From contig NW_008806295.1 in NCBI RefSeq assembly GCF_000400465.1, forward strand, positions 120,001-152,000: DNA of 32,000 nt. Reading direction: 5' to 3'. This document shows positions 1,386-29,143 of the stretch, one piece after another. Both the position numbers and the translations under genes were made by a program. The stretch comes from Wallemia ichthyophaga EXF-994. Lineage: Eukaryota; Fungi; Basidiomycota. How positions within the stretch are numbered: position 1 is the first letter of the stretch; each line of letters opens with the position of its first letter. Under the pieces are notes generated by a model. The model was given only the letters and a program-made list of their open reading frames with translations. It did not search any database and was not told where the DNA came from.

Positions 1386-4300
1386 TCAAATCAAAGCTAT
1401 CCTGTTGTCTTTTATATTGAATATCAGCCAAGCCGACGTTTGGGTTTTCTGGTCGCGCACCCGCTCTCTTATCAGATGAAGGTAAGAGGATATGTGGGGT
1501 GAGCCAGCACCTAGAACCTGTTTAAACTTGTCGTCATCGCGTATCCAGTCGCTGTTCATTGCCATTCTATCAAAGACAACTGCTGGTACATCGACAGCCA
1601 GCATCGCCTTACTAGCATTTTCAAATTCTTGTAATGCACTCTCAGCTGTTTTGTGTTGCGTTTCGTGTTTTGCGTTAACATTGTAATTATAAATTGAGTA
1701 TCAAACTCACCTCTGTCACTCATTAGGGCCCGATTCCGCTTGTTAATCTTGTTCTTATTGTCGTCCTTTTTAAATGACCACGCTATCTCACTTGGCATGG
1801 CAAGATGAATATCAACACCAGGTGTATCTTTGTCATGTGTCCTCGATATTTCGTCCTGTGATTGGCGCAGCTTCCTCGATAGAAAATCAACGATATCATG
1901 TCGATCGACTGTGAAGAGTTAAGCTCAGTTATTAAAAAACACCTATAACCAACCACACACCTTCCTCCTCTGATTTTTTAGACAGCGTATTGCGCACCTT
2001 CAATACTGTACTGTTCGCCTTGAGCAGCACGAGATAGGTGATTCCCTCGCCTCTGCACCTTTCCATCAACATATCAGGACTTTGATATGTATGCGATCCG
2101 TCGTACATCTGTAGACATTAGCAAACCAACACCAAATCCCAAAATGACTTACCACGTCAGCTGAAATACCAGCATCCCATAATAGCGCAGCTACATCCAT
2201 CCTCTCGCTCATCATGCCCTGGTATGTATTACCAAAACTTCCAACATAAACATCACACCGACGAGGCATGTGGTTTTTCTGTCCAGGCGACATTTTCGAA
2301 TTGGGCTTCTTATTACTGGAATCCATCACACAACTAGCCAAGACATCTACATTAATGCGCAGGTTAACCATGAACGGAAGTGTTCTTGTAGTGTGGGACA
2401 GCTTTTTCAGAAGATTATCAGATCGCCCGCCGATTGCCATCGCTTCTCGACGTCCTTTAGCGACCCTCCTGCTCACATCAAGCATCAATCCAGATGCATA
2501 GTCGTCATACGAGTCATTCAATAACGTCGTCGTATCAAATACTATATTCCGGCGGCTGTGGTGGCGAGAGAAGAACTCAAATGTACTGTCTAGATCGCCT
2601 AACGTCTCTTTCAATTCATCTTTGTGATGCGGGAGTGCTTTCATCATCTCTGTAAGCATTGTTTTATGGTCTTTACCTCTGATCAGGAGATGCTCGAGCT
2701 CTTCTAGCCGCGCAACACTCTTGGTGTTGTCTATCTGCGCCGTAAGCTGGCTGCGTACATGTGGCATGCCCACTCCCTTTCCGAGCTGGTCGAATATTCC
2801 CAGTACTGCCGCACGTTTCTTGGTTGGGAAGAGTGAGAGGATGATTTCGACAATGACTGAGTGATTGATCCTGATCTCCCAATTTGAAGATATTACTGAT
2901 GGATGCTCTAATACCTTGTCAATTACTGACATTATCTCTCCCTCCATTGCCTTGGTAGTCGTTGGAGACACTATATCAAAATTGGCCTCCGATTCTTGAA
3001 TTGGTTGGCCACCCGCTACATTACGCTTAAAGCGGCCTCCCATCCAGAACCGTTTGGTGCGTGTAATGTTCTGCTTCAATATTATTCTGGTAAATCCTAC
3101 CAGACCATTGTAAGGTAGATGCACAACACAACCAGTGCTGTCGAGCAAGCTGACTACTTCTTTGTCTTTGATACCTTCACTTTCATCCGGCTTGGGAGAT
3201 AGGAGAGGCGAAGCGAGAGGCACTGCACCGTGTAGCTTGAATACCCAGTCTAGATGCTCCTGCACTAGGCGTATAATTGCATCAGGAGAAAGCGATCCTC
3301 CGCCAGTATCGTAGGTGTGGTATTGCAGTGCGTTGGGTGAGTTGTTAAATAGCCTTGAAACTAGTTTCTGGTATCGCGGTTGGTCGGGATGGAGAACTCG
3401 CAAAGCTTCTTCAAAGTACTCCTCTTCCATTGTCTCAGGTAGTAGACTTGAATGGAGCACCTCAGCGGCCGATGGCCGTTCACTTTGGTCGTGCTTGAGC
3501 ATCCACTCTATCAGTCTCTTTTCATCTACTAAAGTATCTGGAAATGTTGATGGAAACACCGGCTTTGGCTGTCTCATTTGATGCAGTACTTGGACTCTCT
3601 CCATACCCGTCCTGAACTTGTTGCACATTTCAAAAAAGATTATCTTGGGTGGGTTGTTAGACGACCAACAATAGATAGCTCACTTACGCCTAATGAGAAG
3701 ATGTCTACTTTCTCAGTATATCTTCCACTGCTATTTGCAATTTCCGGCGCAATATAAAGACTCGTACCAACAGCTGATGTAGTATCACTCGACTCATTGA
3801 CTAGCGCCCTATCAAATATCATGCTATTGTTAGAATCGTTCACTCCAAGTGTAGCAAGACCGAAATCACCAATCTTGACATCACCTTGTGCGTCGATGAA
3901 AATGTTGCTCGGTTTCAAGTCGCGATGTACGATGCCAAGAGTATTGATATAAGCCAGTCCGTCTAGTACTTGTCTGAAGATTTTCCAGCGTTCTTCTGTG
4001 CTTAACCCTTCTTCAAGCGACTCTGATAGAGTCAATTTCTCGCAGTACTGCATCTGTATGTACAAAATGCGCGAGTGAGATGTCAAGTTTTTCTTGTTTT
4101 GGTCTTGAGAGCTACGGCTACTCAAGCTACTGCTATCGCTACTAACTTCACTTTCATTCTCGTTCTCGCTCTCATCCTCATCGTCGTTCTCGCTATCCTC
4201 CTCATCACCCCCTTCGAAGAATATACCATCGTCTCTGCTTGCCGTCTTTGCAACACTGAGCGAATCATCAAACTTGGGATTGAGAAGTTTGTGCATAGAG

Positions 4301-19213: not shown

Positions 19214-20847
19214 TTAAGAAACGTGATGTTCAGCTGTTTGTCCTGTTAATAAACCCTCATACGACATCATCTACCCAACTCACTTTGATGTTGAACTTGA
19301 ATCTTGACAGGATCGAATGGGTTAGATCCATTTCCGCCATTAGCTGGCTGCTCTGATCTATACAGCGACTCCTCGTCATCCTTGTCTTCTGTGTTGTACG
19401 AGTTCTGTCCATGATCGTTGAGTTGCTCTTCATTGACATCTGCAAGTGTCCCGACAAAGTCTGTTGAGAACTCATTCATTTTGTAAGATCCGAATGTCGT
19501 TGTTTGAGGCTGTGCTGCATTTCCGCGACGGTTAGTTCCACCAATGGTAACAACTGGACCTGGTCCGCGCGAATTGGATCTGTCCTTTGATGATGTCGAT
19601 CCTGCACCAGTGGTATCGTCAAGAGCGCGTAATGAAAGAACCAATCTGCAACCCCTGTTGATTGTGTCAGTGTGCCGTTGTGTCTCGGCTGGGTGAGAGA
19701 CACTCACATAATCGCTGTAAGGGCAATTGCTAGGGTTGAGTTGGCTGCCTTGATATTGTCTGGTGTGACCAAGTAGCTGTGAAATAATCAGTCTTAGCCC
19801 TTGCAAGCTCGATCCTTTTCCAACTTACAACTGTACGTGCCTTAGTTTCAAATGTCTTTTGGAAATTAAAGACGACTCACAATCATGTTTATCAGGTTAA
19901 TTCCGAAAATAATAGAGAAATAGAGCAATCCGTCTCTCAAGAATACCTTTGCGATCTTGGACCTCGAATGGGCACGATTGAGCGCGAGTTTAGCAATCGT
20001 CATCAGAACGACAATTGCGTCAAAGATAAGTGGAACAATCCAATAGGCGGTTGTGAGCGGGTGTGTACCAGTTGAAATGCAACCCATCTCCAGCGTACCA
20101 AATCCTTGAGGGAATTGAACAGGTTCATAGAGGGCAGCCGCAGCGGCCATGATGGCTGCTTCGACTAATAAACAGAATAATAGCGGAATTAGAACGTATA
20201 ATTTCTGTGATCGATGATAAGCTTTGTTCCTGCGGACGTTACTCATTGCGCACGAACCTTTCCCCAAAGTGCCCAAACACGGATAAGAAGAATGGCTTCA
20301 GTTGAAATGACAGTAATGAGCGCAATACCCTAAACATCGTGTTAGAGGCTTTTTGTGCTGCGGGATTTGGACCGACGGGTTCAATTTTAGCATAGGTTTC
20401 ACACTGTGAATCAGATAGATACTGGTAGTGGAAACCGAAAGCTGTTTCTTGTCAATGCCGCTGTGTTGGTATATCTTTAACCCACTAATCAAAGTAACTG
20501 AGATGACTGCAGAGTATCGGGTCTTTTTGAATCAATTAGTTAGTTAATGCAGTTAATAAAACCACATACAATGAAATAAAGCACTTTGACAATAGACCAA
20601 GGTGCCTTCCATATTCTGCGGTACTAACCGAATATCAGCGAACGTTCTGGGACAATGCTATATAGTTGAGTCACCTCTAAATGGATGGTGGTGAGAATAT
20701 CCCACAGAAGCACGGCCATAGCGGCCGCGTCGTACGCTCTGAGAGCGTTCATTTGAAAACGCCTGGCGAATCAAGTTAGATAGCGTCTTCTTTTCTTAAA
20801 AACGCAACGAACGCAAGATCGAGCGCTGGAGGCACAGTATCAGCCAT
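19214..20847 (-). CDS. DUF6533-type fungal multi-pass (about 7 TM, GPCR-like topology) membrane protein, about 378 aa, 11 exons
   Basis: Spliced product: MADTVPPALDLARFQMNALRAYDAAAMAVLLWDILTTIHLE-YRRIWKAPWSIVKVLYFI-TRY..-GIALITVISTEAILLIRVWALWGK-KLYVL..LRDGLLYF..NLINMI-F-YLVTPDNIKAANSTLAIALTAIM-GCRLVLSLR..VTIGG..HQTEHHVS. Ten GT-AG introns of 44-53 nt give 1137 nt. The WD..T..E..IW..YF.RY, RVWALW, LRDG..YF and RL.L.LR patterns match this basidiomycete family from memory. Confidence 0.8.
19829..19830 (-). other. Predicted 2-nt micro-exon (TT)
   Basis: The minus strand reads ..CTAAGGCACGTACAG | TT | GTAAGT.. It is flanked by a 50-nt intron (19880-19831) and a 52-nt intron (19828-19777), each with a donor, a branch-like motif and an acceptor. 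It is needed to keep the last hydrophobic helix in frame. Confidence 0.7.
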
Positions 20848-27304: not shown

Positions 27305-29143
27305 ATGCTCATGTACACAGACAGCAGCCCAGACGACAAGATGCAATTCAGCAGTCGGCGATCGACAGTGCACTCCCGCCGGGGTCTAGTGAGTACATCG
27401 CAGCCACTAGCGAGTCAAGCGGGGGTGAAGGTGCTCGATCTGGGCGGAAATGCGGTAGATGCAGCTGTAGCCGTTGCAGCCGCCCTCAACGTGACTGAGC
27501 CAAGCTCGACAGGCATTGGCGGGGACATGTTCCTTCTCTACTACGCAGCGAGCGAGCGACGAGTGTACGGCTTGAATGGCTCTGGCCATTCTCCAGCCGC
27601 GCTCACCCGCGACAAGGTCCATTCTCTCCGTCTGCACAACGATGCAGGCACCCTCCCATTCGACTCGATTCACTCTGTCACAACGCCAGGCGCGGCTGCC
27701 GGGTGGTGCGACGCTGTGGAGGCGTTCGGGTCCCACACCCTCACTCTCCACCAGATACTCGATCCTGCGATCCGCCTTGCGCGTCATGGGTACCCCGTCC
27801 ACGAGCTTACGGCGGCGCAGTGGCGCCAGGCCGAGGAGCAACTCCAGCGCGCTTCTCCAAATGCCCACGAGATGCTCCTCGACGGACGTGCGCCGCGTGA
27901 GGGCGAGATCATGTATATGGTGGGTGCACTTGCAAAAAATACTGGCATGTCTCACTTTCTCACAACTCAGCCCAACCTCGCGCGCACATTCGAAGAGCTC
28001 GCACAGCACGGCAAAGACGGTTTCTACAGGGGGAGAGTAGCGGACGAGATCGTGGGGCTCGTGGCGAGTCGCGGTGGGCTGCTCTCGCACTCCGATCTCG
28101 CCGCACACCGCAGCGAGTTCGTCGAGCCGCTGACATACACGTATGCGGGCGAGTATGTGGTGCACGAATGCCCACCTAATGGCCAAGGAGTAACTGCGTT
28201 GATAGCGCTGGGTATACTTGAGTCATGCGAGCGTCTCGGCCTCCTGTCAGCTCCGCTGCTTTCTCTCCCCCACAACGGCACAGAGTACCTCCATTTCCTC
28301 ATCGAGAGTCTCCGGCTGGCGTTCGCAGACTCGAAGCGATACACGTGCGACCCCACCTTCTCCACTCACAACACCTCCACTCCCACTCCACCCTTCGATT
28401 ACACCAAGCTACTCGCGCCCGACTATCTGGATGCTCGCGCCAGGTTGATTCACCCGCACAAAGTGAGCAGCGTGCAGCACGGGGCACCAGAGCACTCCTC
28501 AGACACTGTTTATTTCACCGTCGCTGATGAACACGGCAACGTCGCCTCCTTCATTAACTCCAACTACGCAGGTTTTGGCACGGGTGCTGTGCCCCGTGGA
28601 TGCGGTTTCACCCTCCAGAACCGCGGCGCGGGTTTTGTGTTAGAGAAGGGACATCCAAACGAGCTCGATGGGGGGAAGCGTCCTTACCACACTATTATAC
28701 CGGCTATATGCACGCTTAAGAGCACCAACGATATCTTTCTCAGCTGGTCCGTTATGGGTGGCTTCAATCAGCCACAAGGTCAATTGCAGACTTTCTTGAA
28801 CATCCTTAGAGGCCTTTCGCCTCAGGAGGCTGTCGATAAGGAAAGGTTCTGCATCGGCGCTATCAAGCAGGCTAGAACTCCTAATCCCCCTGTCCCGCTC
28901 AAGCAATCCGCACTGCAGGGTCAGATGCACGATTCAGATATCAACACAGAAGTTAATATGGAGGAAGGCGTCGATGAGATAATCTTGGAAGAACTGAAAA
29001 GAATGGGTCACGATGTGACTATTGCGAGGAAAATGCAGAGACAGGTCTGTGGCCGTGGTCAGATCATTCAGAAGACTGCACACAATGTCTGGTCAGCTGG
29101 CAGCGATATGCGCGCAGATGGTTGCGCTATGCCGCAAGTCTGA
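27305..29143 (+). CDS. Gamma-glutamyltransferase-like Ntn hydrolase (YwrD/HpxW-like cytosolic subfamily), about 595 aa after splicing
   Basis: STSQPLAS..GGNAVDAAVAVAAALNVTEPSSTGIGGD, CPPNGQG, SSDT (nucleophile Thr), SFINSNYAGFGTG, LQNRGAGF, RPYHTIIP, VMGGFNQPQGQ and SDMRADG. There is no signal peptide or TM anchor. One stop-free 51-nt intron lies at 27920-27970. Confidence 0.93.
   Translation: MLMYTDSSPDDKMQFSSRRSTVHSRRGLVSTSQPLASQAGVKVLDLGGNAVDAAVAVAAALNVTEPSSTGIGGDMFLLYYAASERRVYGLNGSGHSPAALTRDKVHSLRLHNDAGTLPFDSIHSVTTPGAAAGWCDAVEAFGSHTLTLHQILDPAIRLARHGYPVHELTAAQWRQAEEQLQRASPNAHEMLLDGRAPREGEIMYMVGALAKNTGMSHFLTTQPNLARTFEELAQHGKDGFYRGRVADEIVGLVASRGGLLSHSDLAAHRSEFVEPLTYTYAGEYVVHECPPNGQGVTALIALGILESCERLGLLSAPLLSLPHNGTEYLHFLIESLRLAFADSKRYTCDPTFSTHNTSTPTPPFDYTKLLAPDYLDARARLIHPHKVSSVQHGAPEHSSDTVYFTVADEHGNVASFINSNYAGFGTGAVPRGCGFTLQNRGAGFVLEKGHPNELDGGKRPYHTIIPAICTLKSTNDIFLSWSVMGGFNQPQGQLQTFLNILRGLSPQEAVDKERFCIGAIKQARTPNPPVPLKQSALQGQMHDSDINTEVNMEEGVDEIILEELKRMGHDVTIARKMQRQVCGRGQIIQKTAHNVWSAGSDMRADGCAMPQV

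What the first reader, a model, noticed from the sequence alone, without database searches (positions are those of the whole stretch)
19777..19880. Predicted 2-nucleotide micro-exon in the DUF6533 membrane-protein gene
Seen (minus strand): ATT | GTGAGT..CTAAG..TACAG | TT | GTAAGT..CTGAT..CACAG | CTAC. The two flanking introns (50 and 52 nt) match the window's usual length, while one merged intron would be 104 nt, far above any other here. Including TT gives NMI-F-YLVTPDNIKAANSTLAIALTAIM-GCRLVLSLR, an intact final helix. Skipping it, with the next intron spliced normally, hits TGA soon after. Inference: a real 2-nt exon that standard aligners and gene finders would miss, and a natural frame switch.
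Basis: partly seen in the sequence, partly recalled or inferred. Interest (0 to 1): 0.7.

Follow-up and report, generated by a model that had tools for sequence, protein, structure and literature searches.

The report
Conserved 2-nt exon in Wallemia gene
A membrane-protein gene of the salt-loving fungus Wallemia almost certainly contains an exon only two bases long (TT) that every public annotation of the gene has missed; such tiny exons are already documented in other fungi, so this is a well-supported new example, not a new phenomenon.

Summary
On the minus strand the sequence reads ATT|GTGAGT…(50 nt)…TACAG|TT|GTAAGT…(52 nt)…CACAG|CTAC, with TT at 19830-19829. The window matches Wallemia ichthyophaga EXF-994, and the gene is a DUF6533 multi-pass membrane protein with 11 exons.

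No single canonical intron joins the flanking exons in frame while keeping the downstream 'YLVTPDNIK' segment. TT is the only two-intron solution with strong donors and normal intron lengths.

Comparative evidence is strong:
- AG|TT|GTRAGT is intact in five Wallemia lineages, while the intron interiors are only 45-70% identical and carry indels that are not multiples of three.
- In 'YLVTPDNIK', 14 of 16 pairwise differences fall at codon position 3, in the frame that needs two extra bases.
- 112 of 131 distant homologues have exactly the spacing the TT model gives, and the nearest outgroups read …NLINTIFY….

Four public models all miss the exon, each in a different way: a 132-nt intron (RefSeq and others), a GA-AG intron (JGI), and read-through of intron A (W. 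hederae). The 132-nt model's acceptor is absent in two lineages.

I could not obtain RNA evidence. Exons of 1-2 nt are already documented in Coprinopsis and Fusarium, so this is a new member of a known kind. The 'frame switch' idea is untested.

The parts
19214..20847 (-). Whole CDS of the DUF6533 gene (locus J056_002593 of W. ichthyophaga EXF-994). The corrected model has 11 exons and 378 aa. Exons: 20847-20813, 20762-20675, 20623-20570, 20522-20486, 20441-20377, 20329-20258, 20204-19881, 19830-19829, 19776-19708, 19654-19284, 19233-19214.
   Evidence: Pfam DUF6533, E 5e-13. Model assembled. The same model with the 132-nt intron is identical to EOQ99078.1.
19881..20204 (-). Exon 7 (324 nt), ending …GINLINMI in phase 0.
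   Evidence: Conserved in all lineages.
19831..19880 (-). Intron A, 50 nt. Donor GTGAGT, branch-like CTAAG at 19845-19841 (11 nt before the AG), acceptor TACAG.
   Evidence: Its length is 50/46/58/48 nt in four lineages and its interior is 49-63% identical. A yTAAs-GC branch motif is conserved at a fixed distance from the AG.
19829..19830 (-). Two-nucleotide exon TT. It supplies the first two bases of codon TTC (Phe226); the third base is C at 19776.
   Evidence: Invariant in five lineages. It is the only canonical way to keep the frame. F is the commonest residue in that family column, 36 of 131 with no gaps.
19777..19828 (-). Intron B, 52 nt. Donor GTAAGT (GTGAGT in other strains and species), branch-like CTGAT at 19791-19787 (11 nt before the AG), acceptor CACAG.
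   Evidence: Its length is 52/48/52/52/49 nt. There is a 1-nt indel between W. mellicola and L013. The W. hederae NCBI model uses this donor and acceptor itself.
19708..19776 (-). Exon 9 (69 nt): C + YLVTPDNIKAANSTLAIALTAI + AT. It covers the end of the sixth hydrophobic helix, a polar loop and most of the last helix.
   Evidence: No indels. 14 of 16 pairwise differences in the first 27 nt are at codon position 3. Hydropathy is and the family alignment.
19749..19750 (-). AG inside exon 9 that the RefSeq/NCBI models use as acceptor of a 132-nt intron (19880-19749). It is probably not a real acceptor.
   Evidence: P0003 equals the 132-nt model. The AG is AA in L004 and W. hederae. That model loses 10 residues present in all relatives and scores 31.6 bits lower.
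19655..19707 (-). Intron C, 53 nt, phase 2 (AT|G).

Best explanation
The DUF6533 gene of Wallemia carries a constitutive 2-nt internal exon (TT, 19830-19829, minus strand) between two ordinary short spliceosomal introns of 50 and 52 nt.

Each intron has its own consensus donor (GTGAGT, GTAAGT), its own branch-site-like motif about 11 nt upstream of its own YAG, and a typical Wallemia length. Fungi with short introns are thought to recognise each intron as a unit (intron definition), so each can be removed without reference to exon length.

The mature mRNA reads …AAC ATG ATT-TT-C TAC TTG…. TT plus the first base of the next exon make codon TTC (Phe226), inside the sixth hydrophobic helix of the protein.

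The acceptor of intron A and the donor of intron B are only 2 nt apart. I therefore infer that the two introns are removed one after the other and not simultaneously, in the manner of recursive or twin-intron splicing. The order is unknown.

What is shown: the sequence anatomy, its conservation, the coding constraint on the downstream exon, and the fit to the family. What is inferred: actual inclusion of TT in the mRNA, and sequential removal of the two introns.
For: 1. Anatomy and coordinates are confirmed.
2. I enumerated all GT/GC-AG combinations. No single intron keeps exon 9 in frame. Of 19 two-intron combinations, only TT has two consensus donors and introns of at least 45 nt.
3. AG|TT|GTRAGT is invariant in W. 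ichthyophaga (two strains), W. mellicola (two strains), W. hederae, Wallemia sp. L004 and Wallemia sp. L013. Intron interiors are 45-70% identical, with lengths 50/46/58/48 nt for intron A and 52/48/52/52/49 nt for intron B.
4. Exon 9's first 27 nt have no indels, and 14 of 16 pairwise substitutions are at codon position 3 in the frame that requires two upstream bases. The skip-TT frame contains a stop in W. mellicola.
5. 112 of 131 distant homologues have 33 residues between the NLxN and xRLxLNLR anchors. The TT model gives 33 and the RefSeq model 23. The TT codon column is F36/L29/V27/I21 with no gaps.
6. The nearest outgroups read NLINTIFY. One of them, P0007, lies on intronless 1.6-1.9 kb contigs that look like transcripts. 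Atractiella has the F-Y codons on one uninterrupted exon.
7. HMM scores, using a model built without Wallemia: TT 310.4 bits, RefSeq 132-nt 278.8, codon absent 301.4, skip-TT 237.
8. The TT model gives two hydrophobic helices separated by the polar loop TPDNIK. The 132-nt model fuses them into one run of about 47 residues.
9. Exons of 2 nt are documented by long reads in another basidiomycete: 57 in 50 genes of C. cinerea (PMC12230235). A 1-nt exon with SRA support is reported in Fusarium (PMC12940212).
Against: - There is no RNA-level evidence. No transcript-derived ORF or contig for this gene exists in the collections searched.
- Homology cannot separate F (TT+C) from V (the GA-AG model); the difference is 0.7 bits.
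- The branch motif of intron A in W. ichthyophaga is CTAAG, not CTRAY.
- The motif YAGNNGTRAGT on its own is not rarer than chance.
- The 3' end of intron A is no more conserved than that of intron 3.
- All five lineages belong to one genus, so the conservation covers limited phylogenetic depth.
Confidence: 0.88

Rival explanations
1. One 132-nt intron (19880-19749, GTGAGT…ATCAAG|GCAGCC) is removed. The protein then lacks F-YLVTPDNIK. This is the model in RefSeq/GenBank for W. ichthyophaga EXF-994 and in the population-genomics annotations of W. ichthyophaga and W. mellicola.
For: It is canonical GT-AG and in frame. It was chosen independently by the annotation pipelines. The window's 132-nt model is identical to EOQ99078.1.
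Against: - The acceptor AG is AA in Wallemia sp. L004 and in W. hederae.
- The 27 nt treated as intron show a codon-position-3 substitution pattern and no indels.
- The model removes 10 residues present in essentially all 131 homologues: spacing 23 against a family mode of 33.
- It scores 31.6 bits lower.
- 132 nt is about 2.5 times the longest intron of the gene.
- It has no branch-like motif or pyrimidine tract before the acceptor.
- It fuses two helices.
Confidence: 0.03
2. A single non-canonical GA…AG intron is removed, with the donor shifted 2 nt into GTGAGT. This gives codon GTC (Val) instead of TTC (Phe), as in the JGI model of W. mellicola CBS 633.66 (…NTV-V-YLVTPENIK…).
For: The JGI model P0006 has exactly this reading, and it can only be obtained with a GA-AG intron. 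It gives the correct family spacing and an HMM score within 0.7 bits of the TT model.
Against: - GA-AG is not a recognised spliceosomal intron class.
- The model leaves unexplained why an internal CAG|TT|GTRAGT and a second branch-like motif are conserved in five lineages inside otherwise diverged sequence.
- It would make a 94-110-nt intron in a gene whose introns are 44-58 nt.
- The reading is what a cDNA- or homology-guided aligner produces when it must place 3 nt but cannot place a 2-nt exon: one mismatch, G for T. This last point is my inference.
Confidence: 0.03
3. TT is skipped in a substantial fraction of transcripts (104-nt excision). This gives a frameshifted, truncated 259-aa product or an NMD target, so the micro-exon acts as a regulated on/off switch. 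It could coexist with the best explanation.
For: Skipping does shift the frame to an early TGA. Tiny exons are expected to be hard to splice. Alternative splicing in W. ichthyophaga differs between salinities for many genes (PMC3849046).
Against: There is no evidence for any skipped isoform. Exon skipping is very rare in this fungus: one case was reported, although by TopHat, which cannot see a 2-nt exon. The strong consensus donor directly after TT argues for efficient use. The skipped frame is not conserved, and in W. mellicola it hits a stop inside exon 9.
Confidence: 0.08
4. The locus is a decaying pseudogene or carries an assembly indel, and the AG-TT-GT arrangement is coincidental.
For: Without the micro-exon, a frame problem exists at exactly this point.
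Against: The same arrangement is present in at least seven independent assemblies from five lineages. The rest of the gene is intact, with purifying selection on both sides of the junction.
Confidence: 0.01

Closest known systems
Ultra-short (1-3 nt) internal exons in Coprinopsis cinerea, found by long-read annotation (PMC12230235)
   Same: Both are in Basidiomycota with short introns. That study reports 57 exons of exactly 2 nt in 50 genes. Omitting such an exon creates a premature stop in most of the affected models, and the authors note that such exons break automated gene models.
   Different: The C. cinerea exons are supported by full-length cDNA reads; this one rests on comparative genomics only. 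The lineage is different (Wallemiomycetes, an early-diverging and highly compact genome) and so is the gene family (DUF6533; the C. cinerea study highlights enrichment in P450 genes).
Single-nucleotide exon in Fusarium CYP621A P450 genes (PMC12940212) and in Arabidopsis APC11 (PMC4674806)
   Same: The logic of discovery is the same: an 'intron' about twice the usual length, an internal AG-N-GT conserved among orthologues, the frame restored only if the tiny exon is kept, and an intron-free homologue showing the uninterrupted codon. Here Atractiella plays that last role.
   Different: Those exons are 1 nt, this one is 2 nt. Those cases have read-level RNA confirmation.
Spliceosomal twin introns (stwintrons) of filamentous fungi (e.g. 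PMC5587772, PMC5639578)
   Same: Two short canonical introns lie immediately next to each other and are probably removed in consecutive reactions. Both are a source of annotation errors.
   Different: In a stwintron the internal intron interrupts a splice signal of the external one, and nothing from between them stays in the mRNA. Here 2 nt must stay, and no canonical 'external' intron can be formed. The feature is therefore not a stwintron.
Recursive splice sites (zero-length exons, AG|GTAAGT) of Drosophila and vertebrate long introns (from general knowledge, not checked here)
   Same: A 3' splice site is juxtaposed with a regenerated or adjacent strong 5' splice site, and removal is stepwise.
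   Different: Recursive sites leave no nucleotides behind and serve very long introns. Here the introns are about 50 nt and two nucleotides are retained as coding sequence.
Misannotated plant microexons (PMC8831610)
   Same: These are conserved, frame-critical exons of 15 nt or less that are systematically missed or mis-modelled by annotation pipelines.
   Different: They are in plants and are often found in exon-definition contexts with longer introns.

Membership tests
Constitutive spliceosomal micro-exon (3 nt or less) | Flanked directly by a canonical 3' splice site (YAG) upstream and a canonical 5' splice site (GTRAGT) downstream | tested here: met
   TACAG|TT|GTAAGT at 19835-19823. The same arrangement is present in five lineages.
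Constitutive spliceosomal micro-exon (3 nt or less) | Each flanking intron is complete on its own: donor, branch-like motif, acceptor, and a length typical of the species | tested here: met
   The introns are 50 and 52 nt, against 44-53 nt for the other eight introns. Branch-like CTAAG and CTGAT each lie 11 nt before their AG. Both motifs are conserved in position across lineages. Branch use itself was not tested.
Constitutive spliceosomal micro-exon (3 nt or less) | Inclusion is required to keep the conserved reading frame, and no canonical alternative exists | tested here: met
   Exhaustive enumeration. The only in-frame canonical single intron (132 nt) deletes conserved coding sequence, and its acceptor is missing in two lineages.
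Constitutive spliceosomal micro-exon (3 nt or less) | Conserved at the orthologous position in related species | tested here: met
   Five Wallemia lineages. Absent in the Atractiella homologue, where the codon is uninterrupted.
Constitutive spliceosomal micro-exon (3 nt or less) | Present in the mature mRNA | not testable with these tools
   No transcript-derived sequence of this gene is in the collections searched.
Stwintron (spliceosomal twin intron) | An internal intron interrupts the donor, branch or acceptor of an external intron, and both are removed leaving nothing in the mRNA | tested here: not met
   Contiguous removal of the whole 104-nt block breaks the frame. No canonical external intron boundaries restore it.
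DUF6533 (PF20151) fungal membrane-protein family | Significant match to the Pfam model, and full-length similarity to family members | tested here: met
   Pfam E 5e-13, 49.4 bits against a cut-off of 24.1. 4,739 relatives at E of 0.001 or less. The alignment covers all helices.

The most novel reading that the evidence does not exclude
The 2-nt exon forces an obligatory order of intron removal, because the two splice sites 2 nt apart cannot be occupied at once. Its inclusion efficiency might then be condition-dependent (for example on salinity), so that skipping produces a frameshifted NMD substrate and tunes the level of this membrane protein. That would be a fungal, intron-definition counterpart of regulated micro-exon switches.
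Probability: 0.08. Interest if true: 0.55.

Novelty: new member of a known kind. Interest (0 to 1): 0.4.

Why it matters
**Annotation.** The RefSeq/GenBank protein for this locus (EOQ99078.1 / XP_009270133.1) and its orthologues in W. mellicola and W. hederae are all wrong at this junction, in three different ways: 10 residues deleted, Val in place of Phe via a GA-AG intron, and 16 intron-encoded residues inserted. The corrected 378-aa model restores a helix-loop-helix that is universal in the DUF6533 family.

**Wider points.**
- It extends documented exons of 2 nt or less to Wallemiomycetes, a deep basidiomycete branch with one of the most compact fungal genomes.
- It shows that such exons can be predicted from raw sequence and confirmed by comparative genomics alone.
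- It offers a simple natural substrate (two ~50-nt introns, two retained bases) for asking how an intron-defining spliceosome handles splice sites 2 nt apart.

It does not change the understanding of splicing in principle.

Tried and rejected
- **Deep family search with the spliced TT protein.** I used the JGI protein P0006 instead.
- **Search for RNA evidence.** The full-length and junction-peptide homologue searches found only genomic models and unspliced ORF fragments. The scan of JGI metagenome/metatranscriptome contigs with the protein gave 600 pattern hits, none a relative. The scan with a degenerate spliced-junction pattern gave 0 hits.
- **Motif rarity.** YAGNNGTRAGT is not over-represented, 3 against 1.04 expected. 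I dropped this as an argument.
- **Origin by tandem duplication of an intron.** Introns A and B are no more alike than shuffled controls in 4 of 4 species; the best case has a fraction of 0.054. No support.
- **Special constraint on the 3' end of intron A.** 9 of 20 positions are invariant, the same as intron 3. Not claimed.
- **Stwintron or nested-intron solutions, and shifted single-intron solutions.** None has canonical boundaries.
- **My first gene model.** It had a wrong start, a wrong intron 3 and no last intron. I corrected it from the orthologues.

Full report
**Observation.** The finding is exactly as described. On the minus strand:
- Exon 7 ends …AAC ATG ATT at 19881.
- Intron A runs 19880-19831 (50 nt): GTGAGT … CTAAG … TACAG.
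- TT sits at 19830-19829.
- Intron B runs 19828-19777 (52 nt): GTAAGT … CTAAG/CTGAT … CACAG.
- The next exon begins CTACTTG at 19776.

**Identity of the locus.** The gene encodes a DUF6533 protein (Pfam E 5e-13). Its closest relatives are 'hypothetical proteins' of Wallemia ichthyophaga and W. mellicola. When I model the window with the annotators' splice choice, the product is residue-for-residue identical to EOQ99078.1 / XP_009270133.1 of W. ichthyophaga EXF-994. The window is therefore that genome or one indistinguishable from it at this gene.

Guided by the orthologues, I corrected my first model. The gene has 11 exons and 10 introns of 50, 51, 47, 44, 47, 53, 50, 52, 53 and 50 nt, and it encodes 378 aa. 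The published mean intron length is 61 bp for this species and 55 bp for W. sebi/mellicola (PMC3849046).

**Is the micro-exon needed?** Exons 7 and 9 lie in the same raw frame, 105 nt apart, so exactly 3 nt (or 0) must survive splicing.

I enumerated all GT/GC donors and AG acceptors in the interval. No single canonical intron keeps 'YLVTPDNIK…' in frame. Among 19 formal two-intron solutions, only TT combines two consensus donors (GTGAGT, GTAAGT) with introns of at least 45 nt. The others need donors such as GTCGTC or GCTTGC and introns of 22-36 nt.

It deletes F-YLVTPDNIK and is the model used in RefSeq and in the population-genomics annotations.

**Comparative test.** I obtained the orthologous DNA from:
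- a second W. ichthyophaga strain (L001);
- two W. mellicola strains (L002, L003);
- W. hederae (L012);
- two unnamed Wallemia lineages from Logan assemblies (L004, related to W. hederae; L013, related to W. mellicola).

In every one the block CAG|TT|GTRAGT is intact. Around it, the intron interiors are only 45-70% identical. Their lengths differ by amounts that are not multiples of three: intron A is 50/46/58/48 nt and intron B is 52/48/52/52/49 nt. A branch-site-like motif is retained about 11 nt before each of the two AGs.

The 27 nt after the second intron behave quite differently. They have no indels, and 14 of the 16 pairwise differences are at codon position 3 in the frame xxC|TAC…. That gives FYLVTP(D/E)NIK in the three lineages compared, and FYLATPENIK in W. 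hederae. In the frame produced by skipping TT, W. mellicola hits a stop inside the segment.

The Lys codon is AAA in L004 and W. hederae, so the AG acceptor of the 132-nt model does not exist there.

**Family test.** A full HMMER scan with the JGI W. mellicola protein found 4,739 relatives. I aligned 131 of them.
- 112 have exactly 33 residues between the N of NLxN and the R of xRLxLNLR. The TT model has 33 and the RefSeq model 23.
- The column encoded by TT+C is never gapped and is F in 36, L in 29, V in 27 and I in 21.
- The three nearest non-Wallemia proteins read NLINTIFY…. One of them (P0007) lies on intronless 1.6-1.9 kb contigs that look like assembled transcripts.
- The genomic locus of the Atractiella rhizophila homologue has LINTIFYLLPNPALEAVNSPM on one uninterrupted exon. 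The two introns around TT are therefore not shared with that outgroup.

I also built an HMM from the non-Wallemia sequences only and scored each model against it:

| Model | Bits |
|---|---|
| TT micro-exon (F) | 310.4 |
| Same with Val (GA-AG style) | 309.7 |
| Codon absent | 301.4 |
| RefSeq 132-nt intron | 278.8 |
| TT skipped | 237 |

Hydropathy gives the same answer. With TT there are two helices separated by the polar loop TPDNIK. With the 132-nt intron they fuse into one run of about 47 residues.

**How the public annotations cope.** Four different models exist and none contains the exon:
- 132-nt (or orthologous) intron: W. ichthyophaga EXF-994 and E3P96, and W. mellicola E3Q05/E3Q24.
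- JGI W. mellicola CBS 633.66 reads NTV-V-YLVTPENIK. I showed this can only be produced by a GA…AG intron that borrows 'GT' from the donor. An aligner that needs three bases but cannot place a 2-nt exon would give this result.
- W. hederae reads through intron A, which happens to be open there (+16 aa, VSGTFAEEVLELTHRQ), and then uses the TT|GTGAGT donor of intron B.

**Mechanism.** Shown: two complete, typical short introns flank two retained bases. Inferred: in a short-intron fungus each intron is recognised as a unit, so exon length is not limiting. The upstream acceptor and the downstream donor are 2 nt apart, so both cannot be engaged at once and the introns are probably removed sequentially. 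Either order leaves a normal substrate for the second reaction: …ATTTT|GTAAGT, or …TACAG|TTCTAC. The order, the efficiency and any regulated skipping are untested.

**What did not work or was dropped.**
- No RNA-derived sequence could be found.
- The bare motif is not rarer than chance, and the two other hits are ordinary exon ends.
- Introns A and B are not detectably related to each other.
- The 3' end of intron A is no more conserved than that of intron 3.

**Comparison with what is known.** Exons of 1-3 nt are established:
- 13 one-nt, 57 two-nt and 27 three-nt exons in Coprinopsis cinerea, from long reads (PMC12230235);
- a 1-nt exon in Fusarium CYP621A, argued in the same way and confirmed with SRA reads (PMC12940212);
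- a 1-nt exon in Arabidopsis (PMC4674806);
- widespread misannotation of small plant microexons (PMC8831610).

No paper in the library links Wallemia and microexons. The feature is not a stwintron, because two bases must remain in the mRNA.

**Verdict.** This is a new, well-supported member of a known kind. I give 0.88 confidence that TT is in the main mRNA. Its interest is moderate: it corrects the annotation of this gene in three Wallemia species and provides a clean natural test case. It does not reveal a new principle.

Noticed in passing
window 27305-29143 (+): An intronless 612-aa gamma-glutamyltranspeptidase ORF (PF01019, E 3.7e-123) forms a compositional island: GC is about 0.56 against about 0.44 in the rest of the window. 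An intron-free, GC-shifted gene in an intron-rich genome is a candidate for horizontal acquisition.
   Followed up: partly
window 19214-19290 (-): The gene has a tenth, C-terminal intron (19283-19234, 50 nt, GTGAGT…TTAAC…AAACAG), which gives the ending …VQHQTEHHVS. That ending is shared with W. mellicola. The E3P96 W. ichthyophaga annotation (P0001) misses the intron and ends …QHQSELGR.
   Followed up: yes
L002 / P0002 and P0005 (W. mellicola NCBI models), orthologous to window ~20257-20205: These models carry six extra residues (GIYAIQ / DIYATQ) after …ALWGK. The residues are absent from the JGI model and from the other species. This is probably a mis-set boundary of intron 6.
   Followed up: no
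window 20763-20847 (-): The true start codon is in a small upstream exon (MADTVPPALDLA, ATG at 20847), followed by a 50-nt intron with a CTAAC branch site. The ATG at 20752 that looks like a start is internal.
   Followed up: yes
window 1705-1715 and 3682-3692 (-): These are the two other YAGNNGTRAGT matches. Both are ordinary exon-intron junctions where the YAG is coding (…SDRG|GTGAGT, and the kinase-like …DIFSLG|GTAAGT). They are not micro-exons.
   Followed up: yes
(database behaviour): The word-indexed homologue search with the full-length protein missed the W. hederae orthologue. That protein is clustered under a 100-aa unspliced ORF fragment (P0008) as representative. Absence of hits in that tool is therefore weak evidence of absence.
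   Followed up: partly
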